Positions 1,418 through 42,519 of a DNA stretch of 64,000 nt are shown here, piece by piece. The translations under genes and the position numbers were made by a program. Under the pieces are notes generated by a model. The model searched no databases. It was not told the origin of the DNA and saw nothing but the letters and a program-made list of their open reading frames with translations. The stretch's first letter is position 1. Each line of letters begins with the position of its first letter. Source of the DNA: Antechinus flavipes (Eukaryota); assembly GCF_016432865.1 (NCBI RefSeq), contig NC_067402.1:16926001-16990000 (forward strand), written 5' to 3'.

Positions 1418-2032
1418 TCTGTTCCACATTAGTTCCATGTGCTTCAATAATTTGGTTAGCACACAGTTTGATCATGAAGAAGTAGCATGGAATAGAGATT
1501 GAAGTCAGTTTTTCCTTCAACATATTGTGTGCGCCCAGCAGGTTGCCAGATGCTCTCAGTGCAGCAGGGAAGTCTCTTTAAGCAGGTATCTTACGAGAAA
1601 CAGTTGCCTCCCATCTTTCCCCACCCTGAGCACTTTTGGATGTTGGAGCCACAGAACTCAGTAAATTTGTCCTTGGATAACCTTGTTGAACTTAGGTTTG
1701 AGAATTGCTTCCAATGTCTTGGTTCTGTTGAGGTGATGAAAGGATACTAAAATGGCCCTTACGTAGAAAACTTGATTAGATAGTTCACAGTGTCATAATA
1801 AAAGCCAGAGGATTGGAAATTGGTCATCTAAGCAGGAAGGATATCCCAGAAGGTAAGTGACCCATCTGCAAACCACAGCTTTTTCAGTGGTTTTGGTTGT
1901 TTTTGCCTAAATTATAGGCATTATTGGTCAGAAATCCAAGTGATTCTGGTTATTCAATTGTGCAGTTCAAATTATGAAGAAAGTAACTGAGTAACCAGAA
2001 TCCAAATGGCTCATGTGTTGTGTGTCTTGTAG

Positions 2033-2158
2033 GAGGAGAGGGCCAAATGTAGCAGCTACGCCGACGAACTGGCCAGATTGGAGTTGAAGTGGAAGGAGCA
2101 GGTGAAAATCAGTGAGGATGCGATGCTGCGCCTTGCGGAGGTGGAGGATCAGAACAAA
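2033..2158 (+). CDS. TAX1BP1: TAX1BP1 internal coding exon (end of coiled coil): EERAKCSSYADELARLELKWKEQVKISEDAMLRLAEVEDQNK
   Basis: AG acceptor at 2031-2032 and GT donor at 2159-2160; 126 nt, phase 0/0. The translation aligns with recalled human TAX1BP1 DEKAKCNKYADELAKMELKWKEQVKIAENVKLELAEVQDNYK. Confidence 0.93.
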
Positions 2159-5100
2159 GTCAGTGTGGGCCTTGGTTGTTTAATAGTATGTGGAGCATAG
2201 AAAGTCTTAGCTTTCCCACCAAGAAGACAGAGTCTTAGCAGCTAAAATGACTGCTTTTGTGCCTCTAATTCTAAGCATATGTTTGTTGAACTAATGTTGA
2301 ACATCCAATACTATTAGGAAACATTTCTTACAAAGCTTTGTGCTGAATATCCATTTACAGAGAGCCTCAAAAAGCTTTGTGTGGTTTTAATGACTAGCAC
2401 TGGGACATGTTGAATGTCTCTCGCCCCAGAAAACTGATATGCTATATAATACTCCTTGTACCACAAAATACATAGTGAAAATAGATGTAATTTGAATTTT
2501 ATTTCCTCACAAATAAGAATTCATTACACTTCTATGCTTAAGAGTACCATCTTTAGCACTCATCAAAATATGAATGGATAAATACATCCTTATCAATAGG
2601 TTCCCTAACGGAATCTTAAAAAAAATTTTTTTTGCAATTATCTGTATGAAAACAAAGTATTCAAAGTACTTTGATACAATCTATGCCAAATTAAGCTGGA
2701 ATTGAATTTATGGATGTTAAGAAAGATTTCAGGATTGTCTTAAGGACTTCTATTTACTACAGACTTGTTCCATTGTTTTCTTTATCTACAGCCATGAAAT
2801 TTGGTGAAATCAAATTTAATTGAGCTTTCTTTGAACTTGTATCTGTTTTTTCTACTGGTAACTTAACTTGTAAATTCAACTTTGATATACTAAAAGATTT
2901 TATCTGAACGAATTTTGGTACAAATTATTAGAAAATAAAGGAGCCTACCAATGGATATGGTAGGAATCAAGGGTACATTCACCGCCAATGCACAGCACAA
3001 GATATATGTAAACAGTGTGTGAACCCACAGTCTGTATTTTCGGAGGCAGGACACTATCCCTTGCTTTCTGGGGGAATTCGGCCTTCAATACCAAAATCCG
3101 GCTCGGATTTGGTGGAACTCTTAAAATCTTAAATTCACTATGAAATGAATTCTGTCTTGTGATGATTAGCTTGTACATGATGGCATCTTTTAAAGCAATC
3201 CAGTGTACGGGGTGTGTGGATGTGTATTTTGGGAGTGTGAGTATATGGAATGTGTATGCACGTGCTTGTGTGGAAGTGTATGTATGCGTACGTGCTTTGA
3301 TAATAGGCAGCATTTTTAGCAGGAGTGCAGTGGCATTTAATTACATCTTTGTCTTCCATTTAGTTCTAGCCTAGGTCAAATGATCAGCAAAACATAATGG
3401 AAAAGATTATTTTATTTCCAGAGATAGTGAAACTAGTGGGTAGGGGAAGTCCAAAGCTTCACAGCACAGAGACAGAAGACACGTATAGATTTTAGGGTGC
3501 TATGTTTAGTTATTAGTTTGTTGTAAGCAAACTCTAATAATGGAATATAGTGGGATAATATTTGTTAGGGTGAATTGATCCATTTATGTGCAGCAGTTTG
3601 CTTTGCATCTCCCTTATGGTTGTGTAAAACAGATTCATGGCTACTTAGCATACATAGGTGATATGCTTTATTATTGTACTAATATTGTATGCTATCTTAA
3701 AAGTGATTTCAGGCTTATGATAATTTATGTCTTCATTAAGACAATCTTTCATAAGAAACAAAGGGACCAAATGATATTTAATGTATGATAAATTTATTGA
3801 GTCTTGAGCTTTACACGGTAGTGCCCTTATAATTTGCTAAGACAGGTAGTGAGATTGATGTCCATTTTTTGGTAAATCAATTAAATTGTTGGCAAAACCA
3901 TTTTATCAAATAAAACAGCTGGCTTGAAATTTTGAAAACCATTTGGATTTGTTGTGTTAGGACAAAATATAGAAACATTTTGATGAAGCCGGTCAGATCA
4001 ATTCACAAGAAATTTCTTTTTCCGTTATCATAAAACAAAGCAATCTGGTTAACATGTTAAATTTAAAAGGTTGAATTTGTTTTTCGTTTTTCATTTAGCT
4101 TTCTTCTCACAGAGTAAAAAAAGATTTCCCAACTACAAAATTTCTTATAGTACAAAGGAAAAATACTGATTCTGTACTTTGAAAAGATGTTTCTATCATT
4201 ATTGGCTATTCTTTAATCATTTTTAATCTAAAAATTTATCAGAAATATGTAAAGCCTTTACTGAAGAATAAAGTGTAGATCTCATCTACCAGCAAGGAAG
4301 TGCTCTAAAGATACAAAACTTTTACTGTTTAATACAGTTTCTACTCAAGGCTTGCATGAATATATTGTTTCAAATCCTGAGTGGATTGAAGCAATTCCTT
4401 TACATGATTTTTTGATGTAAAATGATCTTTGAGTAATAATTTGAAGTGAACTTAAACATCTATGTGGAATTATTATATAATTAAAAAATCCTTCACATTT
4501 TCTTTTTAATTTCAAGCATTCTTTAAAAATAAGCTATGTAACTTTAAAATGGCATTTTAAAACTGCCATCTATTAATTTGCAATTTTCTTTGGCAAATTT
4601 TTTGTTTGTATCCCTTTTTTGGCTGTGGTAAACTCACTCCTGTTGATCGTGTAATCATGATCAGTAATAATACCTGATACTATAATACCTGAGAGAGAGA
4701 GCATTCTGTATTTCATAGCAATCTTTTTGCAATCTTTGAGGTCACTCATTTCATAATGAACTCCCTTGTTTTGGATCCTTGCTAATCATGTATAGCCTAA
4801 CCTGATTACTCTTAACATCATTGTGATTTGTCCTCACCCTCCACCTCCTCCTCCTGAGGTGGCCTCAGTTGCACAAAATAAAACAAAATCCCACATTTAC
4901 TAAGTTTCTAAGGGTGAGCTGCAGACTGCCACCCAGAATGGTTGCACCAGTTCATAATTCTTCCACAATCCCTGAATTAGTTGATGTTTTTGACCTTTAT
5001 TATTTATTCTGGTGGGTTGTTTGATAGAATACCAGAATTGTTTTAATTTGCATTGCTCTTATGAGGAATTTGGGATCCATTTTTGTTATAACTTGCCAAA

Positions 5101-6568: not shown

Positions 6569-6756
6569 NNNNNNNNNNNNNNNNNNNNNNNNNNNNNNNN
6601 NNNNNNNNNNNNNNNNNNNNNNNNNNNNNNNNNNNNNNNNNNNNNNNNNNNNNNNNNNNNNNNNNNNNNNNNNNNNNNNNNNNNNNNNNNNNNNNNNNNN
6701 NNNNNNNNNNNNNNNNNNNNNNNNNNNNNNNNNNNNNNNNNNNNNNNNNNNNNNNN
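6569..6756. other. Assembly gap (N run)
   Basis: 188 N. Confidence 1.
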
Positions 6757-14199: not shown

Positions 14200-16340
14200 G
14201 TCTTGTTTTGGGTCAGAGGCAGTTTATTTTAAATGTGATTTGATTTACATTTGTAAGCAGCTTTCTCAACAGGAATTCTTAATCAGTACATCACCTTCAA
14301 TTCCAACAAACCCCTGTCACTTTCAAACTTAATGTTCTTTCCCCCCAACAAAACATATGAAAATATAATTTAAAGCACAGTTTTCACAGACACAATACAA
14401 TACATTCACTATACACGGTATAACAAAATAGTCCCGTCCTTACCTGTTTAGTAATACTGTCACAATGAATAAGTAATTAGAAGCTGGAATTGATTTCATA
14501 GCTGAAAGGAAGTCCCATGCATGATGATTTTATTTTATGACTGTTTAGCTACTAACTGATTCAGCCCGCAGACCCTGGCCCTAGCCACAGCGTGGTCTGC
14601 TCGGGCGCCCCGAGCCAAAGGGGGGCCCTGCCGGGCACCCCCTCGGCACGTCTTCAGTCTGGATCGTCTTTGAAATGGGAGCACTGGGTGTCAGAACCAC
14701 ACTCATGCCTTCTGAGATCTGAGGAAAGTTTTAGAGGGTGTTCTCTTTCTAAACGCTTAAAATCCTCATTAGGAAGGATCCAAGACTGATGAAAGTAGAT
14801 GTTTACACATCTGGCTAACAGAGAACTGTCATCCTTTCAAAAGTTTAGTGAGTGTCCCGAAAAATGAAAGGGCCACCTGCTTCCCAGCTGTGTCCAAGAC
14901 TTTCTATCACACGGGCCCAGGCCACAGGGGAAGAGCGTTGTCACAGGCAGCCCTAACTTGCTTTTTACCAATTTGTTTTGTGGGAAGTTGGCCGTCTCAG
15001 AGCAATTTTTATTGCATAATTAGGCAACTGGTAAACTCATGTTTCAAGAATAGCACTTGGGAGGAAAGAAACCCTCAATGATGGTCCTGTTACTGAGGAA
15101 AAGCTCAGGGATGGTCCCCATAGAAGCGAACGCTACAGTGGGCCGTGTCGGTCACCGTGCTCTCTGACCACCTGCTGCTAGAAGCACTTCATTGTCGGTA
15201 AGGCTCAATGTTTCTTGTGTCGGCAAAGCGATTTATAAAGCTAAACAGAGTTCCAATGGGAATGTGCACACCTTGCGCGTGGGGCAACCCTCTCCCTCCT
15301 CCCCGCCTGGAGGGTCTCCCCTTGAAACATGCTCAGAGCTTTCATCTTGATTTGCTGCCACAGGCACGAAAGGGCAGGAGTTGCAAGAATTGGCAACACA
15401 TAAAACATCAAATCTGTTGGCAATAGAGAACTGCAAAGTGCTTTAAGACTTCATCCGAGGATGAAGAGAGAACTAAATTTCACACACACAATTTGCATTC
15501 TAAGTATTTCAAAGTGTTTCCGAACAGATTTTAGGGGAAATAATTCATTGAATCTTGGTCCTCAAACATCTGATGGGCATGAATCGAGCACCCAGCACCA
15601 TGCCTTGTACTTGGTAGGCACTCGATATGGGATGACGGATGGATGGAGTATGCCTCTTAAAAAGTCATTTCTGACATTAAAATGATTGCTCAGTCACATG
15701 GCAAGATCTTCAGCACTTCAAAGGGGAAAAAAAGATTGGCAAGAAAATATAAAACACAGAAAGCACACCTCTTTATGTATGTTATTTAAGTATGAAAATA
15801 TTTTTAGCATATTATGTTAAACATTCTTATATAATTTCTGCTCCCTAACGACTGGCTAGCCACGGGTCTGAGCTCCCCTAGGTAAGGCATGTTAACCAGC
15901 TGGACGACAGTGGTGATGTTTTGGTTTCCACACGTGTGAGTCGATGTGTCGAGAGACTTCAATCGCATTACGATCTCGAAATGATCTCAGTGCCAGGCTT
16001 CCCCTCCCAAGTCGGTAACACTGCAGGACAATTAAACCTATTTTCCACATGCCCTCGTTTTTATTTTGGGGAAAATATTCTGAAGAGCCTAGAGCTTTTT
16101 TCTGTTTTAGCACCTTATATCAAAGTAATGAAAATGGTGGGTATGGTCGATTACATGTGCAAATGTACAAAATCATTAACTCTACAAAGATAACATTCCA
16201 AAATTACAGAAAAAAATGTAAAGCATGCATTTAACTCTTCTTTTAAAGGGTTGCTGAACGCTTCCCTCGACAAAAGGTGGCTGTTTTCAAAAATCAGCAA
16301 CTGCTGGTGAGGATTTCTTGGCACAGTTAGGACCAGCGGG
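14200..16340 (-). other. JAZF1: JAZF1 3' UTR (about 2.1 kb), poly(A) signal AATAAA at 14223-14228 on the - strand
   Basis: Follows the TAA stop at 16341-16343. The plus-strand TTTATT at 14223-14228 is the most distal clear signal. The end coordinate is approximate. Confidence 0.6.
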
Positions 16341-16517
16341 TTATTGCTGCATCTTCCTGATAATCTCCGCAGACACGGGCGGGTGGAAATTGATTGTGTG
16401 GTGCCGCAGGCCCTGAGCGGTCTTGTAACTCTTCCCGCAACGGCATTTGAAGGGTTTACGGACGCGGATCTGCGTTCGGTGGCCGTTCTTGGCGTGGTAC
16501 TTGATGCCGTTGACATT
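16341..16517 (-). CDS. JAZF1: JAZF1 last exon (exon 5): NVNGIKYHAKNGHRTQIRVRKPFKCRCGKSYKTAQGLRHHTINFHPPVSAEIIRKMQQ*
   Basis: CAG acceptor (plus-strand ctg at 16518-16520); 177 nt to TAA. Completes C2H2 finger 2, encodes finger 3, and is identical to the recalled JAZF1 C-terminus. Confidence 0.97.
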   Translation of the reverse strand, partial: NVNGIKYHAKNGHRTQIRVRKPFKCRCGKSYKTAQGLRHHTINFHPPVSAEIIRKMQQ

Positions 16518-19500
16518 CTGCAAGGGAGAAAGAAATGATCAGTCTGCAGTGACCCAGGCTGCGGCCTGGGACCCGGCAAGAAAGCGGCCCGGCCCTGGGG
16601 GAGGCTGGTTGTGGGATCCCGTTTGTCAGAGGGCCCGGTTTGGGCGATTGCAGATGAGCGGTTTTCCCCAAGATGCTTTTGAGTGAAGCCAGTAAAGATC
16701 AGAATTTGGGTTCAAATCCTGGTCATCTTACTCAAGGCAGCCTGTGGTACTAAGGGAAAAGGGCCCCAACTAGGACCTGGTTGTACCACCTTTGTGTAGG
16801 CAGGAGCGCAGTTGAGACCCTTGCTGCTTCAGTTAACAAGTCCTAGGACCCCAGGGTCAACTCTAAAGCTCTAAAGTCATTATTCAGCCAGCTGCAGTAT
16901 GTGCCAAGTAAGTGACTGAGGCAGGAGAGCCCACTTTTCTCGTGTCTTCAAAAGAACACAAGCGTGCAAAATGAACAGCATTGGGTATGTTTTCCTCTCT
17001 TGCTGCCTTGGACTAATTGCTCTTTACAAAATTCAGCTGTTAGTGCAGACAGCAAACAGTGTGGGGTAATGGCAGGAAATGGGCCTCCCCTGTATTCCAT
17101 GACTAGGAAGGCAAAAGGAACATTTTTAAATTTGGGCCATCTCGGAGGGACAATGCCCCGATTTCCCTAGAGGACCGATCGGTTAGCACTGGGACATTGA
17201 GGGAAACTTTAGGTGGTCACTTCCTACTCTTTGGCTTGTGGCATTTTTAAATGAAATGGACAATTTGGAGATTGTGGATGTGAAATACTCCTTAGAGTTG
17301 CACTGCTCACGGTCTTTTTTGCTGCTTTCCCCCTCTTAACTTGTCACAAAGGTTGATCCTGATCCCTTAGTGGGAGCGGGGGGGAAAGAGATTCTGAAAT
17401 GAAGGTGATGGATAAGCAAGAGCTCAATATTACCGATACTTGTGTTGGAAGAAGCAGCTTTCTTGCAACTTGCTCTCAACCCCAACATTTCCTTAAACAT
17501 TTAAACGTCTATTCCTGATGGCTTTTTTATTTCAACAGGAAGAGAGGTTTCTGAGGAGATGCAGATACAGGATCTGCCTGAGTAGAGGAATCATAGAAAG
17601 GCTGTTTTGTCATCAAGCCCCTTTCCCCACTGCTCAGCCCATCTCGACCAAAATAGTTAAGTTTACTGCAGCAATGTATCTTCATGGAAATTTGTTAGCA
17701 GCCACGTCCCCAAGGTGAAATAATACTTAATCACATAATATACTAGATGTTAAGTTAAAATTAAAATTAAAAATTTTTTTTTTCTCTGACAACTCCTGTT
17801 CTACCTAGAACTGTCAGGGCACCCTCTGAAATCTCCATGTGTTGGGGAAGTGTTCCCTTCCCATTCTGGGTGCTGCCATTGCCGCTTTATAGTCTACAAA
17901 GGGTAGAGAAAATGCAGGAAATGGGGGTGCAGCAGGAGGAGGGGTAAGGAACACAGATGCCATTGGTCTACCAGAGGGACAAAAAAAAGGGGGAGATGTG
18001 TGATGAGAGAACAGAGCCAGTGTCAGGGTGCTGGAAACACAGGGCTGGAGGGGATGCAAAGGTGGGATGGAAGGGGAAAATATCCCCTGACACAGCTGGT
18101 ACAGAGAGAGATCAGGGAAGGAAAGTGTCCTGCTGAGAGCAGCTTCTGGAGGCTGGGCAGTGCCCGGAGTGACATTGGTAGAGATTGTGATATTGGTAGA
18201 AGTGCCCTGGAGGTTGGCATGAAGAGGGCATTCTGGGAAGGGAAGGGGGTGGGCACCTGGCGTGGACAGGAAGGTTTGCTCATTGGGTGGGTTCAGAACC
18301 ACCCAGTCCCAGAAGTGGGGCAGTGGGATGATGCTGACCGCTGAGCATCCGGGCCAGAGAGGTTTGTTAATGGGAGTCGGGCTGCTCAGGGCCCAGTCCT
18401 GGAGGTGGGAGCATGAGGTGGGCCAGCTGCAGAAGCCCCTTATTAGGAACCCTCAGAAGTGCTGCTTCCCTGGGACAAGCAAGCGGCCTCGAGGGAAGGC
18501 GGCCTCGAGGGAAGACGGCCCCGGAGCCTTGACAGTAGCCACGATGGTAAGTCAGGAAGCCGTGTGCGATCCCTTGGGTGCCAGCCCCCCAAGGTGAGAC
18601 CTTGCACTGCCTCAGCTGCTGGAGGGGACTTTTCCTCTCCCTCCAGATCTTCCAGATACATTTGTCAAGTAGGAGGAGAAGCCCAGATTGGAGGCCCTCT
18701 GGGGCGCCTTCCACTTCTGAAATTCGGTGATAACAGTGGTGATTGGCAGGATTTCCTTGGCTCAGATTCCTCAGGCCTTGGGTCGGTCCAGCTTCTATTT
18801 ATTTATTCATCCCTTCATCCCCCCACCAGTACTTAACACGTGCCTGCCCAGGGCCTCCTTCAGGGGAGTTAGCAAACATTCCCGCCTTTGTTTCCCAGTG
18901 GTGCTGCCGGCCTTGAGATGGGCCATTAAAGAATCCAGTCACACCTCGGAGGCCCGGCGAGCTCACACCTTGATGGAAAATGGGGATGAACCGAGCGGGC
19001 ATTCCATGGCACCCATAGGAGAGAAACTCCGTTGCTGCTTACATTCGCTCCTAATTAGGTTGGGCCACGGGTGGAACCAGAGAGGTCTTAAGCCACAAGA
19101 ATCCAGTGGAATCTGAGAAAACCGAGCCCCTTCTGCCCCAGAGCCGTCCGAGCAGACCTGCCGGGATGGCGAGGGCTCCGCGGCCCCTTTCACATGCTTT
19201 ATGTAAACATTTGTGGCCCGTCTGGCGGGAGCTGGGGTGGAAAAGCCAGCCAGGCCCATATATCAGCTTTATTGGGAAAGGTCACCTGACAATCACACGC
19301 TTTGTTGTCCCAGGATTGATTTCTAGGAAGGTAAGAGCTTTAAAGCTCGTGGGCACCTTCGGGATCCATCTATAGTCTATCCTGGTGCAGATCCCGGTGG
19401 GATTCCTCTTCTGGGTCTGAGCTCCTTCCTCCTCCTCCTCAGCCAGTAATGGATCTTTTGCTTCCCAGCTTTCTCTCTGCGATCCCAAGTGGGGATAGTT

Positions 19501-22260
19501 GGGCTATCTGGGGGGCCCTGGGCTCCCTGAGCACCAGGTGAGTGTGCGGGGCTCTGCGTGGAGTTTCAGGGAGGGATGATCCTGACGTGCCCAAAAGGAG
19601 ATACCGAGGACCCTCCCTCCCGGGTGACCAACAGCCTCCTCACAGCCACACAGGATCTCTGGAAATGACATGCTCCCATGTGGACCGACTGTGAACGGCA
19701 CAATATGGACAGTTGCCTTTTCTCAGGGAAAACATGGCAAGGGAGCTGCTAAGCTTGGGGGGAGAGCGGTATGTTGGATGACCTTTGGGTTACACAGGTC
19801 ATCCCCAACAGGGAGACGTCCGCTCCACGGAGCGTATACAGACGGCGTTGTGCCCCCTTGTGGGGTCTCGGTGAGAGCAATACACGGCCTCTTCTGTGCA
19901 GGAAGGGTTTTTTTTACTCTTTATGACTCCCACTTTGGGGTTTTGTTGGCAGAGACCCTGCAGGGGTTTCCATTTTCTTCTTTGGCTCATTTTACAGGTG
20001 AGGAAACTGAGGCAGAGTAAAGTGACTTGCCCAGGTGTAATATTCTTCTCTAAAATATAATATTCTCTGAGAACAGGTTTCTTGGGGGCTTCTGGGAACA
20101 GCCTTCCTTTCAGTTCAGTGTAATCACCCTGGATGCAGCCAGGTATTAGAGTGCAAATCCAAGTCCTGTCTCCTTCCTTGGGCCCGGTTAGCTTTCTTGG
20201 AGGCCCATCTCTGTCCTTGCTTCTGAGAGCTCCTGCCGCTCATCCTGTGCCAGCTTCAGCTTCTCTTCCTCCGCGCGTCTCCAAATCCAAAGGCTTCGGC
20301 CTCCAGCCAGCACAAAGGTGGAAGGTGGAACGGATCTGTCTCCTCTGAGAGCTTCTAGTGGGCTGGTCCTCCTGCCCCCGAGAGCTCCTCCTTAATGTTC
20401 CACCCTGAGTACACATCGATCATTCCATCACTAGGAAACCATATTTGTTGTAGGATTAAATCGCTGCTAAACTAGATTTAACCAGTGTCTCCTCAATTCC
20501 ACTTAGCACCGGTAAGAATCCAACACCCAGGGTCACACAGGAAGGGTCTGAGGCCGGATTTGAACTCGGGAAGGCAGCCCGACCTGGGCTGGGCGTCCCG
20601 TGCACTCTGGGCCCCGGGCTGTCCCCCTTAAGTGATGGGAAAATGTCCAAGGGCCTGACCGTGACTTGGTGATGTGAGGCCTTCGGTCAGCATTGCCTGG
20701 ATGGGAGTTAATATGGAGGAGACGAGAGACATGGGGGACCGGACAATGGAGGCCGCTCTGGCCACCCCTGGAGTCCGGGGGCCGCTTCTGGGCCAAGGAG
20801 GGACCATGTGAGGATCACCTGAGGGGGGAGGTGTTCAGGCTGAAAAGGAGGACCGGGGCCGAGAGGCAGAGTCAGCGGGAGCCCACCCTTCTCTGCCCGT
20901 TCTGTGGCTCTGGTTTCTAACACTCCAACCGGCACCGCACCATGTTGTGCTGTCTCCTTGCCTGGGGCGCTCACCGGCCTGGGGTCTCACCGGCCTGGGG
21001 TCTCCTGGGTCTGGAGCACTCTCTGACCTGAAGCCTCCTGGCCTTGGGGCACTCTCCAGCCTGGGGTGCTCCCCCCCATCCATGCCCACCTCCCTGGGGC
21101 TCTGGCCGCCTGCTCTAGAGCCGCCTCCTCCAGGGGGCCTCCAGGTGTCTCCCAGCTGCTGATCCCCCTCCGGGCATCTCCCTCGGGCACCAGTGGCCTG
21201 GCCCCGTCCCTTCCCTGCTCCCGCTGGCTGAAGAGTTCCCCACAAACGGCCTCCAGAGGGCGCTGGCTCTCCCCAGGAAGCTTCTCCGCCCTCGCTGGCC
21301 CTTCTGCCGGCTGGCTCTGGAGGCCCCATGGCGGGAGGGAGCCAGAAGCTGAGCTTCCCTCTGCTTGGTCGGCCCCGGGGGATGCTCCAGAATCCGGCTG
21401 AGTGAAGAGTGAGGCACTAATTATGCACCGACGGCATGCACAGCACCGAGGCTGCGGGCAGAAAGGGACCATCCCAGGGTCAGAGGCAGAGGATTCCTGG
21501 TCCCGGGGGCAGCAGCCAAACAGTGTTAGCACCTTTTCTTTAGCGTCACTTCTGGGATCAAATCCTCTCAGGAAACGGTCCCGACACTGCACAAAGACTT
21601 GCACAGTGATAATATTTTGGGGGGAAGTCCCTGAAGTAGCAGCTGGGCTGCGCCTCCACAGGGCCCTTCCAAGGAACGGAGGCAGCACCACCATCCCCAG
21701 GCTCGGGGGCTTTCTCCTTGAGGCTCTCACCCAGGGGGCCTCCACTTCCCTCCCTCGGGGTCCCTCAGCGAGGCTGCCTGACCAGCCCCGGGGGGCAAGG
21801 GCGGGCAGCTGGTGGGTGAGTGCCCCCGTCTCAGCAGGAGTCGCCGCCCTGACTGATGGCCTGGGCATCTGAGGCGTGCTGCCTCTCCTGGGCCCCCATG
21901 CCCGAGAGCGGCGGCCGTTCAGCAGCTGTGGCCCCAGGGCTAGGGGGAAAGCCTAAATCTTTGGGCTGGTTCCTCGATCCTGCGGCTCCAGTGGAGCAGC
22001 CAGGTTTTAGTGGATGGTGCCGGGACGGGCTCAAACGATTCACGACAGGGGTGTTGGGGAGGATCCCGGAGCCATCAGCCCCACAGGCCGGGGGGAGAGG
22101 GCCAAGCGGCCTGGACAGGCTCGCATTTTCTCATCTTTTGGAATGAGTTTAGAAATAAGTACAGGGGGTCCCTTGCCCTGATGCCTGTCTCAGGGGCAAA
22201 GCTCCAAGGCCTCTCCCCTGGAACCTGCCGGTAACTGCCCATCTGCTTCCTGCTGGTCCC

Positions 22261-22590
22261 ATCCAGCCAGGGCCCCGTGTCCCCAAGGGCAGGCTGACCA
22301 GCCCCTCCCCCATCAGCCAGGGCCCCGTGTCCCCAAGGGCAGGCTGACCAGCCCCCCCCCCATCAGCCAGGGCCCTGTGTCCCCAAGGGCAGGCTGACCA
22401 GCCCCTCCCCCATCAGCCAGGGCCCCGTGTCCCCAAGGGCAGGCTGACCAGCCCCTCCCCCATCAGCCAGGGCCCCGTGTCCCCAAGGGCAGGCTGACCA
22501 GCCCCCCCCCCATCAGCCAGGGCTGACCAGCCCCTCCCCCATCAGCCAGGGCTGACCAGCCCCCCCCCCCCCCATCAGCCAGGGCCCGTG
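22261..22590. repeat. Minisatellite: five 50-bp units, then two internally deleted units of about 29 bp and a partial unit
   Basis: Unit CATCAGCCAGGGCCCCGTGTCCCCAAGGGCAGGCTGACCAGCCCCTCCCC; ggcccc/tgtgt recurs at 22271, 22321, 22371, 22421 and 22471. Confidence 0.95.
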
Positions 22591-23802
22591 ACGTGCCCCT
22601 GGCTGCTCCAGCAGGTTCCGGGCCTTTCTGCCGGACCTGAGGAAGGCGCACAGCAGGGAGGCTGGAGGCCGGGCAGGGTCGGGAGGAGGCCCCCCATTGT
22701 GTGCCTCAGTTTCCCCACTGCCACGTGAGGAAGCCCGCAGCTCCTACCTCCTGGGTTACTGAAAGGCTCTCCCCCTCCCCCAGCCCTCGGCTGCCTTAGT
22801 TTCCCCTCAGACAGTTCCAGCCCCCAGGCTCCCCTTGGCCAAGGCCCGGCCTGGGAGGGGCAGAGCAGGGCGGGGCAGCTTGCTCCTTGGGCCTGGAGGA
22901 GCCTGCGAGGCTGGAGGCCAAAGGAGAGGCCGGGTCACAGACTCGCCTCCAAATAAGCGTTTTGGGGACGCCGAGTGGGCGCGGAGGGGCCGGCGCAGAG
23001 GAGGAGCCCCCTGCAGGGGCCTCCAGGAGCTCCCCTTGGCTCCTCCCTGCAGCCCGGGGGGAGGGGTGCTGGGCTCGGCTAATCCCGGCTGACATTCACT
23101 ACCTGGGCCTCAGGTTCCTTATCTGTGAGTGAGAGGGGAAGGACTAGGTCCCCCACGGCGGCCCCTCCCGCGGCTCCTCTGCCCCCACTTCCACAACCCC
23201 GGGCTCTGCGCCCCTCTCAGGCCGGGGCCTCCTGACCCGGGGATTAGCGAAGCTGCCCACCCGCCGCCCTTTCGGGTTTTAGACGTCGGGGGTCGCTTCC
23301 ACAGCTGGTTTTTAAAGAGCTGCTAAGACTTCATGGAAAACTTTGGTTTGGGAGCCGCTGGCGGTTAGGGGGGAGGCCCGGGGCTCCGGCCCCTCCCAGG
23401 GAGAAAATCTGCGGGGCCGGCGGGGGAGGGGGGGAGGGGGAGAGGGGAAGTGGGGAAGGGGGCCATTGTGAAATTGTGGGAAGAACGGAGCCAGGGACCC
23501 CCCCCCCACTTCCATTGGAGGGCTCGAGGGCGAGGCCGAGGGCGGGGAGGGGAGAACCCTCGACTGGACTCAAAAACCGGACCCTTGAAAATGTGGCTGG
23601 GTTCTTGATAGTTTGTCTAAAAGCACCTGCCCCTCCCTCCCTTAATCTCCCCCTTCCCCTCTCTCCCTCTCCCCCTCCTCCTCCCCCCCCCCCCCCCCCC
23701 CCCCCCGGCTTTTCCCCAGGTCTGGCCAAATGAGCCGGCAGCGTGACTGTTCAGTCGGTCGCTTCCCGGCAGAAATTTGGAAAAACGAAGATTCCCCGTG
23801 GA

Positions 23803-24430
23803 GTCCCCATCGCTCCCAGCGCCAAAGCTGGACGGGCGCCCCCTCCCCCCCTCCCAGCGCCAAAGCTGGACGGGCGTCCCCTCCCCCCCTCCCATCGCTC
23901 CCAGCGCCAAAGCTGGACGGGCGCCCCCTCCCCCCCTCCCATCGCTCCCAGCGCCAAAGCTGGACGGGCGCCCCCTCCCCCCCTCCCATCGCTCCCAGCG
24001 CCAAAGCTGGACGGGCGCCCCCTCCCCCCCTCCCATCGCTCCCAGCGCCAAAGCTGGACGGGCGCCCCCTCCCCCCCTCCCATCGCTCCCAGCGCCAAAG
24101 CTGGACGGGCGCCCCCTCCCCCCCCATCGCTCCCAGCACCAAAGCTGGACGGGCGCCCCCTCCCCCCCCATCGCTCCCAGCGCCAAAGCTGGACGGGCGC
24201 CCCCTCCCCCCCCATCGCTCCCAGCGCCAAAGCTGGACGGGCGCCCCCTCCCCCCCCCCCCATCGCTCCCAGCGCCAAAGCTGGACGGGCGCCCCCTCCC
24301 CCCCCCCCCATCGCTCCCAGCGCCAAAGCTGGACGGGCGCCCCCTCCCCCCCCCAGCGCTCCCAGCGCCAAAGCTGGACGGGCGCTCCCTCCCCCCCTCC
24401 CAGCGCCAAAGCTGGACGGGCGCCCCCCTC
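23803..24430. repeat. CpG-rich minisatellite, 14 units of about 39-49 bp
   Basis: The core CCCAGCGCCAAAGCTGGACGGGCGCCCCCTCCC was counted 14 times. Units differ mainly in C-tract length and in whether CCCATCGCT is present. Confidence 0.97.
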
Positions 24431-24992
24431 CTCTCCCGCTACTGCCCGGGACTGAGCGCCCCCTCCTCTGAGAGTCCGGAAGAACCCTCAGAACCGGCAG
24501 ACTGCTCGGAAGGGGACGGGGGCGCTGCCAGCTGGGGTCCAGGGCCGGAGGCTCCGTGAGGGCCCACCTGGGGACGGCGCTGGCGGACTCGGGAGGAAGG
24601 AAGGAAGGAAACCGGGAGCACCATCCCATTATCTCACCGGAGGAGTCGGTGCTGTCACAAAACCCGCTTTAGGGGAAACTGAGGCAGAGGGAGGCAATGC
24701 TCGAGTCTGGATCTGAACTCGGGGCTTCTTGACTGCAGACCCAGCGTTCTCCACCCCGGGCCCCGCGGGATAGGCCCTTCACGCGTTGTTAGACTCTCAG
24801 GAAAATGGGGGGACGGCCTGGATTGGGGCCTTAAAGTCGGTCACCTCCCCAGGGCCTCGGACACCTCCCGCCGGCTTTGACCTCTCGGTGCCCCGGCTAC
24901 TCCCTAAGAGCCCGAGCCCCGGCCCATCTGTCCAGGTCTCCAGGTTCCCGGCAGAAGGCGCGGCCTGGGAGGCGCCCGGGGGGCCCCGTGTG

Positions 24993-25143
24993 GGGCTTCG
25001 CCTTATATCGGGCCCTGCGCGGGCTTCACCTTATATCGGACCCTGCGCGGGCTTCACCTTATGTCGGGCCCTGCGCGGGCTTCACCTTATATCGGGCCCT
25101 GCGCAGGCTTCACCTTATATGGGGCCCTGCGCGGGCTTCACCT
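24993..25143. repeat. 28-bp tandem repeat (5 full units plus a partial unit) built from the JAZF1 exon 4 donor sequence
   Basis: Unit GGGCTTCACCTTATATCGGGCCCTGCGC starts at 24993, 25021, 25049, 25077 and 25105, with a partial unit at 25133. Compare the real junction gggctttaccttatag at 25155-25170. Confidence 0.95.
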
Positions 25144-25163
25144 CGCGCCGGGCGGGGCTTTAC

Positions 25164-25333
25164 CTTATAGCGTTTTTTGCATCCAGGCACCGGGCAGGCG
25201 AAAGGCTTCTCGTCCCCTCCGTTCATGCACATGGAGCTGAGGATGGCCTCGGAGCTGATGGCGCTCTCGGTGGTCCAGGACTCGTCGCTGTCTGATTCCT
25301 CGTAGTCCACCTCCTCCTCGTCATATTCACTGC
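25164..25333 (-). CDS. JAZF1: JAZF1 exon 4: (G)SEYDEEEVDYEESDSDESWTTESAISSEAILSSMCMNGGDEKPFACPVPGCKKRYK
   Basis: CAG acceptor (plus-strand ctg at 25334-25336) and donor AAG|GTAAAG at 25163; 170 nt, phase 1/0. Acidic region plus the first half of finger 2. Confidence 0.97.
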
Positions 25334-26919
25334 CTGAGAGAGGGAGGGACAGGAGGACGCGGTGAGGGCGGCGCCCTGGGGGCCGGCTCAGCCAGCCTTC
25401 CCCCTCCCCCCGCCCGGCTCCCGGGTTCGGCCCTGGATCAGAACCAGAGGGGCCCGGTTCACGTGGTCCCTCGGTGACCCTCTCCCGCCCTGGCTCGGGT
25501 CACCTGCAAAGCCCCCCATTGTCAGTGATCACTATTATCCTGGTCGGGATGGGGCCTGGCAGCCCCGGCCACAGCTGCCGACCCCGATGTGGACCCGGCC
25601 CGACCCAGCCCGCAGTCCCTGACCTGGTTTCTAAAGAATAGGCTGGTAAAGGTATTTCTTGATAATTGGTTTCTTTTGTAATCTCCCACATTTAAAATCA
25701 GTGTTTCGAGAGGCTTGGTCCGTCTGCCAGAGGGTCCGGGGCCCAAAAAGGATTTCGGGACTGAGGCCGGAACCCCCATTTACACCATCAGTCATTTACA
25801 CTTGAGTAAGAATGTGACATTCAGATCACTGAGTAAGAACAGGTTTTGATGAGGGGCAGGGAGAAGAACACAAAGACATTGGCGGGAAGGGTCGGGAAGT
25901 GGGGGCCACCAAAGTGGGGGCCAGAGGTCCCAGCCGCTGCACAAAACATTCACCTAAACAAGCCCTGTGAACGTTCTGTACTATCTGCTCACAAGCCACT
26001 GGAAACATCCCTTCTCCAGAAAGCAGGAGGGGCCTCCAAGGGCCTCAGGAGAAGGGGCCCACCCAAAACTTCAGTCTGGCCCTTTTTCTCCTGCCTTCCC
26101 CCACCGAGAGGGCTCCCCCTGCTGCCCTCCCATTTTGGCTCTTCCTCAGGGATGTTCCCAGTTCCCCAAAGAGTTTGACCTTTAAACCCCTGGCCACCAG
26201 GGAGGTGACTGGACCTGGGTGTTCCGGAGCCATTTGTCATTTGGTGGGAGGGGAGGAGGGGCCAACCCCGACTGGAGCGCCCACCTTTTTCCCCGAGTCG
26301 GCTCCCAGTCTCTGGGCCGCGTTTGCACAAGGCGACCCTGAGGACCATAATTCTCCAGATCATAAACAGTGTAAAAGAATACGCTGACAAGCCCTAATGC
26401 ATTTACAAGCCTGTGGAATAAATGGGAATTAGAACTCCACGGTAATAAGCGTGGGGGGGGGGGGCAGCAGCCCCCAGGTGTGAGACCACGTGGTCCGGCA
26501 CCGTGCAGGGTCTGCTCCTGGGAGCCGCCACGCACCTGCACCATCATCTGGGATCAATGTCCAAGGCCGTTGGGAAGAGCCAGAGCTGGGGGAGGGGGAG
26601 GATCCATCCTCCACGTCCTGCCAGGTGACTCCCCGGGAGGGAGGAGCCCAAGTGGGCTGCTTCTTGCTCTCCCAAGGGAAATGGTGGGGTCGGTCAGCTC
26701 AGCCCAGCGGGTGGACAGTGAAAAAGGAGAAACTGAGGCAAAATGAGTGTGGGAAGGAGATCTCTACCCTCCCAGTGACTTCTGCCCATGGGGCCAAGCA
26801 GAGGTGAAGACTTTCCTAAGATTCCCTGCTGCCCCCGGGGCTAACCAGCGTTTCTAGGGTGCTTCAGGGTACTTCCCATGCTACTTCATCTGAGCCTCCC
26901 AACTCCATCATTAAGATTC

Positions 26920-26980
26920 TATTATTATCCCCACTTTACAGATGAGGAAACTGAGGCCCACAGAAGCTTGGCTCAGATCA
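26920..26980. mobile_element. MIR core fragment (one example; others near 19985, 27840, 37720, 50110, 55920, 61960)
   Basis: ccccactttacagatgaggaaactgaggc CORE motif. Confidence 0.7.
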
Positions 26981-27954
26981 TTGGCTCAGATCAGACTGGG
27001 CAGGGTCTGAGCTCCGGTGCCTTCTGGATTCCAAGCTGCCTCGAGTGCCCTCCAGGGCCTGCCTGGAGCATGAGCACAGGAACCAAAGGCAGCCCCACCA
27101 AGGCCTCTCTGGGCAGTCATCCCCTGCTCCCTGGCTGCCTGCTTGGTCCTGATGGCTCTCGGCCCTCTCTGCCTTTTGGACTTTGTCTTTCCTACAAGGG
27201 TCCCCCGTAGGGACCAACGTGATTGAGAAATGGCCGCCCTGGCTCCCCCGACCACTTTCCTCGCAGGAGGGACGGCGCGGGCTGAAGACAGGCCAGGCTG
27301 GGGACGGCCCGCTCCAGATACAGACCATCTCCCTGCACAATCTGCAGTTTGGGAGATTTTCACTAAGTAGGACACATTTTGGTACATCTAATTTTTAAAC
27401 AAATGCCACAGGGCAGTGCCCTTTCAGATGGCATTTCTCAAAGCCTCACAAGCAAGACCTGGAAATTTGGAATCGCTAATTTACTCTTCTAATTGGACTA
27501 ATTTATTAACCTGAATATCAAGAGAATGAGGACATTTAAAGAAATATCAAACCCAATTCTGTGTTAAATAGAGCTGAGAGAACAAACTGCCCTTCTTGAT
27601 GGAGATGGAAGAGTTGGAATTTTTGGTTTGGGGGCTCCCTTTGTGGATGCAGCTCCAAGGGCTGCAATGTATCAATCCTTGGGCCAAGTCCCAGGAACGC
27701 AGACAGAAACAAAGCGGTCCCTCCCCTCCACACTATCAATGAGAAGTATTTACATCTACATGGCGCTTTTAGGTCCCACAAAGATTTTACACATCGTGTG
27801 ACTTGATTATTACAACCTTGGGAGAGAGGTGCTTTGAATATCCCCATTTTACAGATGAGGAAGCTGAGGTTTGGAGCTTTGGGGACTTGCAGGTGGGCCC
27901 TCGGCACCCTCAGCTTGTGGTCCCTGGCTGGTGGAAATAACTTCTCCCACCTCA

Positions 27955-32428: not shown

Positions 32429-32591
32429 NNNNNNNNNNNNNNNNNNNNNNNNNNNNNNNNNNNNNNNNNNNNNNNNNNNNNNNNNNNNNNNNNNNNNNNN
32501 NNNNNNNNNNNNNNNNNNNNNNNNNNNNNNNNNNNNNNNNNNNNNNNNNNNNNNNNNNNNNNNNNNNNNNNNNNNNNNNNNNNNNNNNNNN
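32429..32591. other. Assembly gap (N run)
   Basis: 163 N. Confidence 1.
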
Positions 32592-32711
32592 GAGACAGAT
32601 AGAGACAGAGACAGAGACAGGAGAGAAAGACAGAGACAGAGAGATACACAGAGAAAGAGAGACAGAGACAGAGATATACAAAGAGACAGAGACAGATAGA
32701 GACACAGAGAC

Positions 32712-32744
<33 letters not shown>
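32592..32744. repeat. (GAGACA)n/(GA)n microsatellite adjoining an assembly gap
   Basis: Read directly from the sequence. Confidence 0.95.
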
Positions 32745-32747
<3 letters not shown>

Positions 32748-33597
32748 GTGTGTGTTGGAGAAACATGTGTTGTATTTTCCTAGCCACAATGGAAAACATT
32801 CATAATTAACACGCTTCTCATTCTTCTCTCGTTAGGACTACAACCATGGATTAAAAACATACATTTCTCAGGGTATCAGGAACCTCTCCTGATGCACAAG
32901 TGGGAGAGACAGGCAGCTCCCTCTCGTTAATTCTGTTTTTTCCCTCTGTGGTTCCTACAATCTCAGGAAACAGGTTTGCATGAAAGATAAGTAACAGCAA
33001 GGAAAAGGACCTACGTAAATAGGCTTTTATGAAACGGTAGTCAAGAAATGTTTTATATCGAAGGCTTAAATGCACTTTACGGCTGTGTAAAAAACACAGC
33101 GCCACTCTCAGCCCAAAGTAAACATTCCAAAGTCTACGAGCCCAACTCCTGCCCAAGGCAGGCCTCCATCAAGTCAGGGAGGGGGGGAGGGAGGGAGGGA
33201 GTGGGGGCTGGACATCACAGGTTCCAGTAGGCTCCAGATTTACTGAATCTGCCATTTCCCCCAGTGCAAAGTAGCAGTCCAAAGCCTTTCTCAACACCCT
33301 CGGATGATGAGAAAAGCAGAGCTCCCCTTTCTGGTCTCATCTATCAGTCAGGCAGCCAAATGCGAGAAGTCCCTTCGTCTCGATGCCGCCGGGCAGCTCC
33401 GTGGAACAAACGTGGAACCTGTAGCTGGAAGGTCAGGTCCTGGAGTCCCCTCCCTTGCCACCACTGCCCTGGGAACTCTTCCTCCCTTTCAAGCACAGTT
33501 CAGGTGGCCTAACTTACACTAACGGAGTCTCCCCTGACACCACCCAGTCATTAGTTCTTCTCTCCCTCTTAAAATTAGCGTGCTTTCCTTTGTACCT

Positions 33598-40251: not shown

Positions 40252-40434
40252 NNNNNNNNNNNNNNNNNNNNNNNNNNNNNNNNNNNNNNNNNNNNNNNNN
40301 NNNNNNNNNNNNNNNNNNNNNNNNNNNNNNNNNNNNNNNNNNNNNNNNNNNNNNNNNNNNNNNNNNNNNNNNNNNNNNNNNNNNNNNNNNNNNNNNNNNN
40401 NNNNNNNNNNNNNNNNNNNNNNNNNNNNNNNNNN
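40252..40434. other. Assembly gap (N run)
   Basis: 183 N. Confidence 1.
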
Positions 40435-42519
40435 CCCCCCTTTAAAGTAGAGCTTAATTTGTTGGTGCAATATTTCAAAAATCCTCTCTCTCATCCTAAA
40501 AGATGTCCTGTTTTATCACTTCATCCAGTACCTTTTCATGATCATGTTCTGGCCAGCATTGGAGTCCCTGCTGAGAGCAGGAGCCAGAGGCTCGTTTCCT
40601 TCCCCCCAACATTTCTAGCACCAGGTACAATATGTACAATATGGCTGGATGGGGAAGGGCTTTGACATTCCTAACAGGGGCCCTATTATTGTTCTTGAGC
40701 GTGGTGGAATAGTCACAGCAGAGCAGAAATTCCGTATATAAACAGTGAGTTATTCCACGCCTGAAATTCTGCAAGGACAACAGAGTAAAAATTCTCAGAC
40801 TTGGCCTTTTATTTAAAGGGAAATAATTTCTATTTTGCTGCTGCAAGGGGAGAAGCCCTTCATTAAATTCTCTGCTGCTGTTGGGCTTTTTGGCTTCAGA
40901 GGCTGCGCCCGGCGGGCCCCAGAGGAGGGCTCCCCCACTCCCACTTTCCTCACCTTTGCCCTTTGCGGGGGCCACCCTGCCTAATCCATGGCCACATGGG
41001 GCTCTTTCCCTCAAGTAATGACTCTACAGACTTTGTATTTACTTATATTATTTACATACTAGGTTTCCTGCGGGAGAATGGACACTCTCTCCAAAGGCAC
41101 GTCTCCATTGCTTTTTGGACTTCTGTTTCCAGCACAGTGTCTGCCAGTTGTCACTCAAATATTCCAGGAGAGTTGTGAGCTCAGCCACATCTCAAGTCCT
41201 CCAGGCCTGCCCATCTGTGTAGCCCTTGCTTCCATGGTCTCCCTAAGCTTGGCACAAGGGTTCTCGCAATGGGAACAAATCAAGCAGTTAATAGCAACTG
41301 AGTTGTTGAACACAAGGCAGTTCGGTACGGTGAGTCCGAGGACCTGGTTTCACTTACTACCTTATACCACTTTGGGCCTCGGTTTCCATATCTGTAAAAT
41401 AAAGGAGTTGGGCCACCCGGCCCCTGGAGCCCAGTCTGTGTGTGAGTCACAGACTCTTTGGGCCATCGGGTCTAGCCTAGGACCTCTTCTCAGAATAAGG
41501 GTTTTAAATACAAAAAAGAAAATCCTTAGGATTACAAAGGAAACCAGAGGCTGATGAAAGCAGATGTCATTATTTCAGTCCCATCCAAGTTTGCAGACTC
41601 CCTGAAATCCATCCTTGGACCAGAAACCCTTGCTCCACCTCTAAGATTCTCTGATTGTTCTCTGTATCTCAAAGGAAGCTGGGTCTGAGGGGAAAGGGGA
41701 AGACCCATCTTTAACATCCCCGTCTGTTCGTCCATCAGTCTGTCCACTGTGTCCCTCTGCCTTCCCCTTCCTCTCCCTCCAAGGGCAGCGGCTGGTCTCT
41801 GACTTCCTTCTTGCTGAGCCTCCCCCTGGCAGTCCGGAGGCTCCACCGCTTGCTTTGTTCTTAGATGGACGTTTATAGCAGGGGGTGCTATTCCCTGGCT
41901 AGAGAAGCTGGTGGAGGAGGGGGGCAGGAGGAGGAGGGGGACAGGAGGAGGAGGGGGGCAGGAGGAGGAGGAGCAGCAGCAGGAGGAAGGCTGCTTTTCA
42001 CTTCTGGCTCTGCTTCCCCGGCTTTAACCACAGAACCTCAGAAAAAGCCCCCCGTGGCCGGGGCTCAGGGCGGGGGACAGGCCCCAGCTCCCGGCCCACC
42101 TTTGTTTTCAGAATCGGTGGCAGAAAGTGAAGAGGAATTAAGAAGCTTCTTAGTGAGGGCCAGCTTGAAGCTTGACATCAAAAACCCCGCTAAAACCCGG
42201 GCTACGGGTCCCATCGCTTCCTGGCCAATAAAGGAGAAGAAACGGAAGCGGCCTCAGATTCTTGGGCTGGAAGGGCCCCGCAGACGGGCCTGCAGCCGTG
42301 ACGCGAAAAGGCGGCCGCTGGGCGCAGGAGAGGACCTGGCGGCAGCCCGAGAGCAGAGATGTCCACAAAGGGCTGCAGATTTTCCAGCAGAAATGTGTGA
42401 CCGAGAGTGCCCGGCTACCAGAAAAGCCGCGCCGGCCAATCCATGCTTCTGACTCGGAGTACCGGAGAAGGCTTTTCAGGGTTACTTGGGCAACAGGGAG
42501 ATCCGATCCTTCGGCGCTT

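What the first reader, a model, noticed from the sequence alone, without database searches (positions are those of the whole stretch)
24993..25170. Tandem repeat made of JAZF1 exon 4 splice-donor copies: a 28-nt ladder of alternative 5' splice sites
Seen: on the JAZF1 strand the real junction is TATAAG|GTAAAGCCC (exon ends at 25164). The adjacent repeat reproduces it as GAG|GTGAAGCCC (+22 nt) and (T/C)ATAAG|GTGAAGCC (+50, +78, +106, +134), plus a GC variant at +162. The real donor lacks the +5 G, so it differs from the copies essentially only at +3 (A vs G). Inference: the array arose by duplicating the exon/intron boundary and may compete for U1, making copy number a tunable regulator of full-length JAZF1. 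Every alternative removes the His half of zinc finger 2 and all of finger 3.
Basis: partly seen in the sequence, partly recalled or inferred. Interest (0 to 1): 0.72.

Follow-up and report, generated by a model that had tools for sequence, protein, structure and literature searches.

The report
Splice-donor minisatellite in marsupial JAZF1
A short tandem repeat just after JAZF1 exon 4 really does copy the exon's splice-donor signal five to six times, but the same layout is already known in human genes such as F7, CBS, IFI6 and ABCA7, where the extra donors are mostly silent, and I could not test whether they are used here.

Summary
On the minus strand, JAZF1 exon 4 ends at 25164 with AAG|GTAAAG. 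A 28-nt repeat of 5.4 copies (24993-25143) follows. It places GAG|GTGAAG at +22, AAG|GTGAAG at +50, +78, +106 and +134, and AAG|GCGAAG at +162.

The real junction is the degenerate first monomer of the array, so the array was born from the exon/intron boundary. The copies are only slightly weaker than the real donor: 7.4 against 8.1 PWM bits, with equal predicted U1 pairing energy. Every alternative destroys zinc finger 2 and removes finger 3.

The functional claim, a U1-competition ladder with copy number as a regulator, could not be tested.

The architecture is a known kind. Minisatellites whose first unit spans an exon-intron boundary are described for human F7, IFI6 (6-16), CBS, LMNB2, PDGF and ABCA7. 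In those genes only the authentic donor, or that donor plus one or two proximal copies, is used.

This scan has already noted at least ten such arrays on other DNA of this same genome. The array also lies in a GC-rich block with two other minisatellites.

Verdict: real, a new member of a known kind, probably a near-neutral by-product. Interest is low to moderate.

The parts
25164..25333 (-). JAZF1 exon 4 (170 nt). It encodes ...SEYDEEEVDYEESDSDESW...PFACPVPGCKKRYK, which includes the Cys half of zinc finger 2.
   Evidence: Sequence and translation. The acceptor AG is at 25335-25334.
25158..25166 (-). Authentic 5' splice site AAG|GTAAAG (last exon base 25164). It has six contiguous pairs with U1 (-2 to +4) and no +5 G.
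   Evidence: PWM 8.07 bits, U1 duplex -6.8 kcal/mol. Joining 25164 to 16517 gives an intact C-X4-C-X12-H-X5-H finger.
25142..25169 (-). Degenerate first monomer of the array: the last 6 nt of exon 4 (TATAAG) plus the first 22 nt of intron 4. It ends in the +22 decoy GAG|GTGAAG.
   Evidence: 14/15 identity across the junction, and 17/22 for the intronic part with gaps of 1 and 5 nt.
24993..25143 (-). 28-nt minisatellite with consensus GTGAAGCCCGCGCAGGGCCCGATATAAG. It has five full units (25141-25002) with one substitution each in four of them, plus a degenerate last unit.
25024..25116 (-). Four identical decoy donors AAG|GTGAAG. Their last 'exonic' bases are 25114, 25086, 25058 and 25030 (+50, +78, +106, +134).
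   Evidence: PWM 7.39 bits each, U1 duplex -6.9 kcal/mol.
24996..25004 (-). GC variant AAG|GCGAAG (+162) in the degenerate terminal unit.
   Evidence: PWM 0.76 bits.
25110..25112 (-). In-frame TGA at +52 to +54. It is the GTGA of the +50 decoy read in the exon 4 frame, and it stops read-through and all products of the +78 and later donors.
   Evidence: The ORF 25110..25310 listed ends here.
16340..16517 (-). Coding part of the last JAZF1 exon (acceptor ttgcag|AAT at 16517, stop TAA at 16342-16340). It holds the His half of finger 2 and finger 3.
   Evidence: C2H2 matches. 93% identity to an NCBI protein named 'Juxtaposed with another zinc finger protein 1'.

Best explanation
This is a boundary-spanning minisatellite. 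Replication slippage or unequal exchange in a GC-rich, minisatellite-prone stretch of JAZF1 intron 4 amplified a 28-nt segment. That segment began with the last 6 nt of exon 4 and the first bases of the intron, so each unit carries a copy of the splice donor. The array is a mutational by-product, not a device. The authentic donor is both the most upstream and the slightly stronger site (A at +3), and it is used for nearly all JAZF1 mRNA. The copies are silent, or at most the nearest one or two (+22, +50) are used at a low level. Shown here: the anatomy, the derivation from the junction, the near-equal site strengths, and the consequences of each alternative. Inferred by analogy with studied human cases: the silence of the copies.
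For: Anatomy.

Edge units: the two edge units are degenerate and the inner units are homogeneous. Four single substitutions occur in 140 nt, none in a donor 9-mer. About 1.3 would be expected there, and P(0) is about 0.21, so there is no sign of selection either way. This is the usual picture of a minisatellite.

Local context: the window has five arrays of period 10 or more, and three of them lie within 2.9 kb (22258-25143). They sit inside a block of 56-72% GC per kb at about 18-27 kb (searches agree), with CpG o/e 0.63-0.66 at 24-26 kb. The region therefore makes minisatellites regardless of splice sites.

Chance overlap: such arrays cover 2.05% of the window, so overlap of some donors by arrays is expected genome-wide. 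The scan has noted at least ten other donor-spanning arrays in this genome.

Precedent: in F7 IVS7, with 37-bp units whose donors are identical to the authentic one, only the most upstream site is used. This held even when the copies were improved to a consensus value of 91. LMNB2 and PDGF use only the authentic donor. IFI6 and CBS use the authentic donor plus the two nearest copies (PMC1557585). ABCA7 shows retention of one 25-bp unit (PMC5954066).

Cost of use: the +22, +50 and +78 products would escape NMD and encode truncated JAZF1. That makes appreciable use costly for a conserved gene.
Against: RNA folding gives no sign that they are masked (z -0.87). Experiments with duplicated strong sites give the opposite rule: the intron-proximal, downstream site wins once the sites are 45 nt or more apart and both are occupied (PMC3413131). 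By that rule the +50 to +134 copies could be used. IFI6, CBS and ABCA7 show that proximal copies at spacings of 12-31 nt can be used.
Confidence: 0.68

Rival explanations
1. One reading: the decoy donors are really used and compete with the authentic site for U1. A copy-number-dependent fraction of JAZF1 pre-mRNA then becomes mRNA for a protein without the His half of finger 2 and without finger 3, or becomes an NMD substrate.
For: Site strengths are near-equal and no masking structure is predicted. The intron-proximal preference for occupied duplicated sites at 45 nt or more (PMC3413131) favours it. Proximal copies are used in IFI6, CBS and ABCA7, and ABCA7 VNTR length correlates with splicing changes. 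The +22, +50 and +78 products would be NMD-immune and therefore visible and translatable.
Against: F7 minigene work shows that identical, and even improved, copies stay silent behind the first site. Here the real site is additionally the stronger one. The products are all truncations of a conserved zinc-finger cofactor. The unit length is not a multiple of 3, and all three frames are closed by +82, so no coherent isoform series results. There is no direct evidence.
Confidence: 0.17
2. The array acts without being spliced at. As a cluster of U1-binding and G-triplet (CAGGG) elements just downstream of a sub-consensus donor, it helps define exon 4. Alternatively, like the ABCA7 VNTR, its length changes neighbouring-exon inclusion or intron-4 removal.
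For: The authentic donor lacks +5 G and +6 T, whereas the exon 3 donor is a perfect CAG|GTAAGT. Each unit carries a U1-complementary site and a GGG. ABCA7 VNTR length is associated with exon 19 skipping.
Against: The F7 study found no autonomous regulatory element in the repeated intronic sequence (heading of section 10; discussion). Nothing in the sequence separates this reading from neutrality. It could not be tested here.
Confidence: 0.12
3. Assembly artefact: the copy number, or the array itself, is a mis-assembly.
For: Short tandem repeats can be mis-sized in assemblies. I could not lay reads on it.
Against: Four of the five full units carry their own private substitution, and the array has clean degenerate edges. 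Two DNA runs hold 78-90% of the sampled words of the surrounding 10 kb.
Confidence: 0.03

Closest known systems
Human F7 intron 7 37-bp VNTR (Borensztajn et al. 2006, PMC1557585)
   Same: It is a minisatellite whose first monomer spans the exon-intron boundary (last 4 bp of exon 7 plus 33 bp of intron). The authentic donor is followed by 4-8 copies. All sites are sub-consensus, and the copies would give aberrant products.
   Different: In F7 the copies are strictly identical to the authentic donor, and the array is a proven polymorphic VNTR with minigene data. Here the authentic site differs at +3 (A versus G), the first monomer is shortened to 22 nt of intron, and neither use nor polymorphism is known.
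Human IFI6 (6-16) 12-nt and CBS intron 13 31-bp boundary minisatellites (cited in PMC1557585)
   Same: The exon/intron junction is reiterated in the intron. The spacing is short (12 and 31 nt, against 22/28 nt here). The authentic donor plus the two most proximal copies are used.
   Different: I saw only the summary in PMC1557585; the original IFI6 paper was not held. From memory, not checked here, the IFI6 unit is a multiple of three and its use adds residues in frame. The JAZF1 unit is 28 nt, and every use truncates the protein.
Human ABCA7 intron 18 25-bp VNTR (De Roeck et al. 2018, PMC5954066)
   Same: The VNTR starts at the GT of the exon 18 donor and each unit begins with a donor. A transcript retaining one unit (out of frame) is observed. 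Repeat length is proposed, and there is evidence, as a modulator of splicing and dosage.
   Different: ABCA7 has 12 to about 427 units and its effect is mainly exon 19 skipping. The JAZF1 array has about 5 units and no expression data.
Human LMNB2 (100-bp) and PDGF intron 4 (81-bp) junction-reiterating repeats (cited in PMC1557585)
   Same: The exon/intron junction is repeated in the intron, and only the authentic donor is used.
   Different: Their units are much longer.
Other donor-spanning minisatellites noted by this scan in the same genome (CHRD, TMEM199, AIRE, an NLRP gene, GARIN5A, DRAP1, DEAF1, RGL3 and others)
   Same: Same genome and same architecture. The follow-up notes reached the same classification.
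   Different: These are AI notes, not checked by me. Some report sharing with other dasyurids, which I could not test for JAZF1.

Membership tests
Exon-intron-boundary-spanning minisatellite (F7 IVS7 type) | Head-to-tail array of a 10-100-nt unit in the intron directly after the exon | tested here: met
   TRF: period 28, 5.4 copies, 93% matches, 24993-25143. There are five full units with 0-1 substitutions each.
Exon-intron-boundary-spanning minisatellite (F7 IVS7 type) | The first monomer contains the last bases of the exon and the authentic donor | tested here: met
   TATAAG|GTAAAGCCC against the unit TATAAG|GTGAAGCCC is 14/15. The intronic remainder is 17/22 with two gaps. The first monomer is degenerate, not identical.
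Exon-intron-boundary-spanning minisatellite (F7 IVS7 type) | The donor sequence is reiterated as pseudo-sites of comparable strength | tested here: met
   Five GT copies at 6.6-7.4 bits against 8.1 bits for the real donor. U1 duplex is -6.9/-7.0 against -6.8 kcal/mol.
Exon-intron-boundary-spanning minisatellite (F7 IVS7 type) | Only the most upstream site (or that plus 1-2 proximal copies) is used in vivo | not testable with these tools
Exon-intron-boundary-spanning minisatellite (F7 IVS7 type) | Copy number is polymorphic (VNTR) | not testable with these tools
   No reads could be laid. No other individual's or species' DNA could be fetched.
In-frame alternative-donor ladder (my recollection of IFI6 6-16; the in-frame property was not checked in any paper read here) | The unit length is a multiple of 3, so that use of successive donors adds residues and keeps the frame | tested here: not met
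   The unit is 28 nt. +22 and +50 shift the frame, and +78 onwards meet TGA at +52 to +54.
Splicing-modulating VNTR (ABCA7 intron 18 type) | Repeat length correlates with isoform ratios or expression | not testable with these tools
   This needs genotypes and RNA from several animals.
JAZF1 (gene identity) | Sequence identity to named JAZF1 proteins, and C2H2 fingers split by the same intron | tested here: met
   The exon 5 peptide is 93% identical over 98% of its length to NCBI 'Juxtaposed with another zinc finger protein 1, partial'. There are C2H2 matches. Seven other contigs' ORFs begin the homologous peptide at the same ...Q|NVNG acceptor.

The most novel reading that the evidence does not exclude
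Two readings are not excluded. (a) The nearest decoys (+22, +50, perhaps +78) are used at a real level. Because exon 5 is the last exon, they would give NMD-immune mRNAs for a JAZF1 that keeps finger 1 but lacks fingers 2-3, with the amount depending on repeat number. That would be a natural, heritable dosage or dominant-negative dial on a NuA4/TIP60 cofactor. (b) The many donor-spanning minisatellites in this one dasyurid genome exceed chance. That would point to a mutational process that nucleates repeats at 5' splice sites. My rough estimate does not require this. Arrays of period 10 or more cover about 2% of this window. If cover is 0.5-2% in the roughly 40 Mb of noted windows, which hold perhaps 2,000-3,000 donors, some 10-50 overlaps are expected. 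At least eleven have been noted.
Probability: 0.1. Interest if true: 0.55.

Novelty: new member of a known kind. Interest (0 to 1): 0.25.

Why it matters
If the copies are silent, as I expect, this is one more natural example for the unresolved question of how the spliceosome picks one of several near-identical neighbouring 5' splice sites. Two experimental rules conflict. 'Most upstream wins' was found for F7, and 'intron-proximal wins when both are occupied' was found for duplicated strong sites.

This array has intermediate-strength sites at 22-28-nt spacing and a one-base difference at +3, so it would be a usable test substrate.

If the proximal copies are used, the products would be stable mRNAs for a truncated JAZF1, and repeat number could affect the dosage of a conserved transcription cofactor.

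For genome annotation, the practical point is that gene predictors may mis-place this donor.

Tried and rejected
1. RNA and DNA reads. The look-up of sequencing runs listed 4 RNA runs and DNA runs of three organisms. There is therefore no junction counts, no copy-number genotyping and no cross-species check.

The antisense 97-aa ORF 24877-25167 found no protein. An exact look-up of the 61-aa ORF 24442-24624 is not on record.

3. A metagenome scan for the unit pattern gave 0 hits.

4. Masking of the decoys by RNA structure was rejected. The fold of 24940-25200 is no more stable than shuffles (z -0.87).

5. A dispersed repeat or transposon origin of the unit was rejected. The unit occurs only here in the window.

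6. Selection on the decoy 9-mers: 0 of 4 unit substitutions fall in them, against about 1.3 expected, which is not significant.

7. MaxEntScan, SpliceAI and Shapiro-Senapathy consensus values could not be computed. The tables are not available, and my attempt to back-calculate the F7 paper's values from remembered frequencies did not fit. I used a PWM from remembered human frequencies and a ViennaRNA U1 duplex instead.

8. The protein atlas on the exon 5 peptide gave only generic C2H2 clusters.

9. The Logan contigs behind P0001-P0008 were not fetched. They carry only exon 5, and P0001 could be from any mammal, possibly human.

The join of the last 30 nt of exon 4, the extension and exon 5 was translated only inside local scripts to get frames.

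Full report
**What is in the sequence**

The minus strand of 25333-25164 is a 170-nt exon. Read in frame from 25334, it encodes GSEYDEEEVDYEESDSDESWTTESAISSEAILSSMCMNGGDEKPFACPVPGCKKRYK. The next coding exon on that strand starts after ttgcag at 16517. It encodes NVNGIKYHAKNGHRTQIRVRKPFKCRCGKSYKTAQGLRHHTINFHPPVSAEIIRKMQQ followed by a stop.

Joining 25164 to 16517 is phase 0 and completes a C-X4-C-X12-H-X5-H zinc finger. This fixes 25164 as the authentic donor.

The exon 5 peptide matches C2H2 fingers. It is 93% identical to an NCBI protein named 'Juxtaposed with another zinc finger protein 1', so the gene is JAZF1. Exon 3 (50968-50772, donor CAG|GTAAGT) is also in the window.

Earlier notes of this scan call the genome that of a dasyurid marsupial, the yellow-footed antechinus. 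I did not verify that.

**The repeat**

Tandem Repeats Finder gives a 28-nt unit, 5.4 copies, 93% matches and no indels at 24993-25143. On the gene strand the consensus unit is GTGAAGCCCGCGCAGGGCCCGATATAAG.

Four of the five full units carry one private substitution each, and none of these lies in a donor 9-mer.

| Offset | Last 'exonic' base | Site |
|---|---|---|
| +22 | 25142 | GAG\|GTGAAG |
| +50, +78, +106, +134 | 25114, 25086, 25058, 25030 | AAG\|GTGAAG |
| +162 | 25002 | AAG\|GCGAAG |

The unit occurs nowhere else in the window (5 matches against 0.00 expected). The junction motif TATAAGGTRAAGCC occurs 4 times against 0.01 expected.

**Origin**

The real junction TATAAG|GTAAAGCCC matches the unit at 14 of 15 bases. 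The 22 intronic bases up to the first copy align to the unit at 17 of 22 positions with gaps of 1 and 5 nt. The last unit (GCGAAGCCCCACACGGGG...) is also degenerate.

Degenerate edges around homogeneous inner units are the normal look of a minisatellite. The real junction is therefore its first monomer.

The exonic TATAAG encodes the Tyr-Lys before the intron that splits finger 2. The intron position is old: ORFs from seven other contigs all start the homologous peptide after a ...Q(cag) acceptor at the same residue. Among the named hits of the same search are fish proteins, from Goodea, Gadus and Arapaima. So the exon end is the source of the repeat and not the reverse.

**Context**

The array lies in a block of 56-72% GC per kb at about 18-27 kb, with CpG o/e 0.63-0.66 at 24-26 kb. 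Two other minisatellites sit within 2.9 kb: a 50-mer x 5.3 at 22258-22523 and a 47-mer x 12.3 at 23839-24406.

Arrays of period 10 or more cover 2.05% of the window. The region makes minisatellites irrespective of splice sites. This argues for a mutational by-product.

**Strength of the sites**

The four AAG|GTGAAG copies score 7.39, the +22 copy 6.59 and the GC variant 0.76.

ViennaRNA duplex energies with the U1 5' end are -6.8, -6.9, -7.0 and -4.1 kcal/mol respectively.

MaxEntScan could not be run. A fold of the pre-mRNA from 25200 to 24940 is no more stable than shuffles (z -0.87). I see no structural masking.

**Consequences of use**

These come from local translation only.

| Donor | Effect | Position of stop | Expected NMD status |
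|---|---|---|---|
| +22 | frameshift | last exon, 59 nt past the junction | immune |
| +50 | frameshift | last exon, 364 nt past the junction | immune |
| +78 | in-frame TGA at +52 to +54 (25112-25110) | 24 nt before the new junction | immune |
| +106 | same TGA | 52 nt before the new junction | borderline |
| +134 | same TGA | 80 nt before the new junction | sensitive |
| +162 | same TGA | 108 nt before the new junction | sensitive |

The NMD calls use the 50-55-nt rule, which is established knowledge. Because exon 5 is the last exon, the proximal products would be NMD-immune and translatable into JAZF1 lacking half of finger 2 and all of finger 3.

Because 28 is not a multiple of 3, the GTGA of successive units closes all three frames by +82.

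**Whether the copies are used**

This is the core of the interpretation, and I could not test it. The look-up of sequencing runs found four RNA runs and DNA runs of three organisms.

Attempts to reach other individuals' or species' DNA through neighbouring ORFs or a metagenome pattern found nothing.

**What is known**

Borensztajn et al. [quoted passage not shown]

- In F7 intron 7 (37-bp units, 5-9 copies, donors identical to the authentic one) only the most upstream site is used.
- In F7 the copies are functional when the first site is destroyed. Copies improved up to a consensus value of 91 still do not compete. Only perfect-consensus copies do.
- The same paper lists IFI6/6-16 (authentic donor plus the two nearest of 25 copies used) and CBS intron 13 (authentic donor plus two copies used).
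- It also lists LMNB2 and PDGF, where only the authentic donor is used.

De Roeck et al. 2018 (PMC5954066) describe a 25-bp ABCA7 VNTR that begins at the exon 18 donor. They observed a transcript retaining one unit and a length-dependent effect on exon 19 skipping. That is the published form of the 'copy number as regulator' idea.

Against a simple 'upstream wins' rule, Hodson et al. 2012 (PMC3413131) show that two strong sites, both occupied by U1, splice almost wholly from the intron-proximal site once they are 45 nt or more apart. The JAZF1 sites are of intermediate strength, so the outcome is not certain. The natural boundary minisatellites are the closer analogues.

**Recurrence in this genome**

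The scan's own notes list the same architecture at CHRD, TMEM199, AIRE, an NLRP gene, GARIN5A, DRAP1, DEAF1, RGL3, EFNA4 and others on other pieces of this genome. The follow-ups reached the same classification and gave me the F7 lead, which I then checked in the paper.

A rough expectation is 10-50 chance overlaps. It assumes array cover of 0.5-2% and some 2,000-3,000 donors in the roughly 40 Mb of noted windows. This does not demand a special mechanism. It is an estimate, not a test.

**Verdict**

The origin from the exon/intron boundary is supported. The regulatory ladder is untested and, by analogy, unlikely to be more than low-level use of the nearest copies. This is a new member of a known kind, and interest is low to moderate.

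Noticed in passing
window 18000-27000: A GC-rich block (56-72% GC per kb against about 32-48% in most of the rest of the window) surrounds JAZF1 exon 4 and the proximal half of intron 4. CpG o/e is 0.63-0.66 at 24-26 kb, so that part meets the usual CpG-island criteria inside the gene body.
   Followed up: partly
window 23839-24427: A large minisatellite with a 47-nt (TRF also 44-nt) C-rich unit, about 12 copies at 96% matches, lies in intron 4 about 570 bp downstream of the donor array. Long spurious ORFs run through it on both strands.
   Followed up: no
window 22258-22585: A 50-nt x 5.3 minisatellite (97% matches) runs into a related 29-nt x 2.7-3.2 array. The 50-mer contains GGGCAGG, the core I recall from classical human minisatellites.
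   Followed up: no
window 50772-50968 (- strand): JAZF1 exon 3 (197 nt, ...KKKIQPKLSLTLSSSVSRANVSTPPRHSSGSLTPPVTPPITPSSSFRSSTPT) has a perfect consensus donor CAG|GTAAGT. This contrasts with the sub-consensus exon 4 donor AAG|GTAAAG.
   Followed up: partly
window 6569-6756, 32429-32591, 40252-40434: There are three runs of N (188, 163 and 183 bases). The second abuts a long imperfect (GA)n tract at 32592-32748. They were left as they are.
   Followed up: no
They encode part of the conserved stretch of exon 4 (roughly SSEAILSSMCMNGGDEK). This blocked all read-based tests of the finding.
   Followed up: no
window 53562-53732 and 41913-41987: Purine-rich low-complexity tandem arrays (55/75-nt units of GA-rich sequence, and a 17-nt GGAGGAGGGGGGCAGGA unit x 4.4) lie in intron 3.
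   Followed up: no
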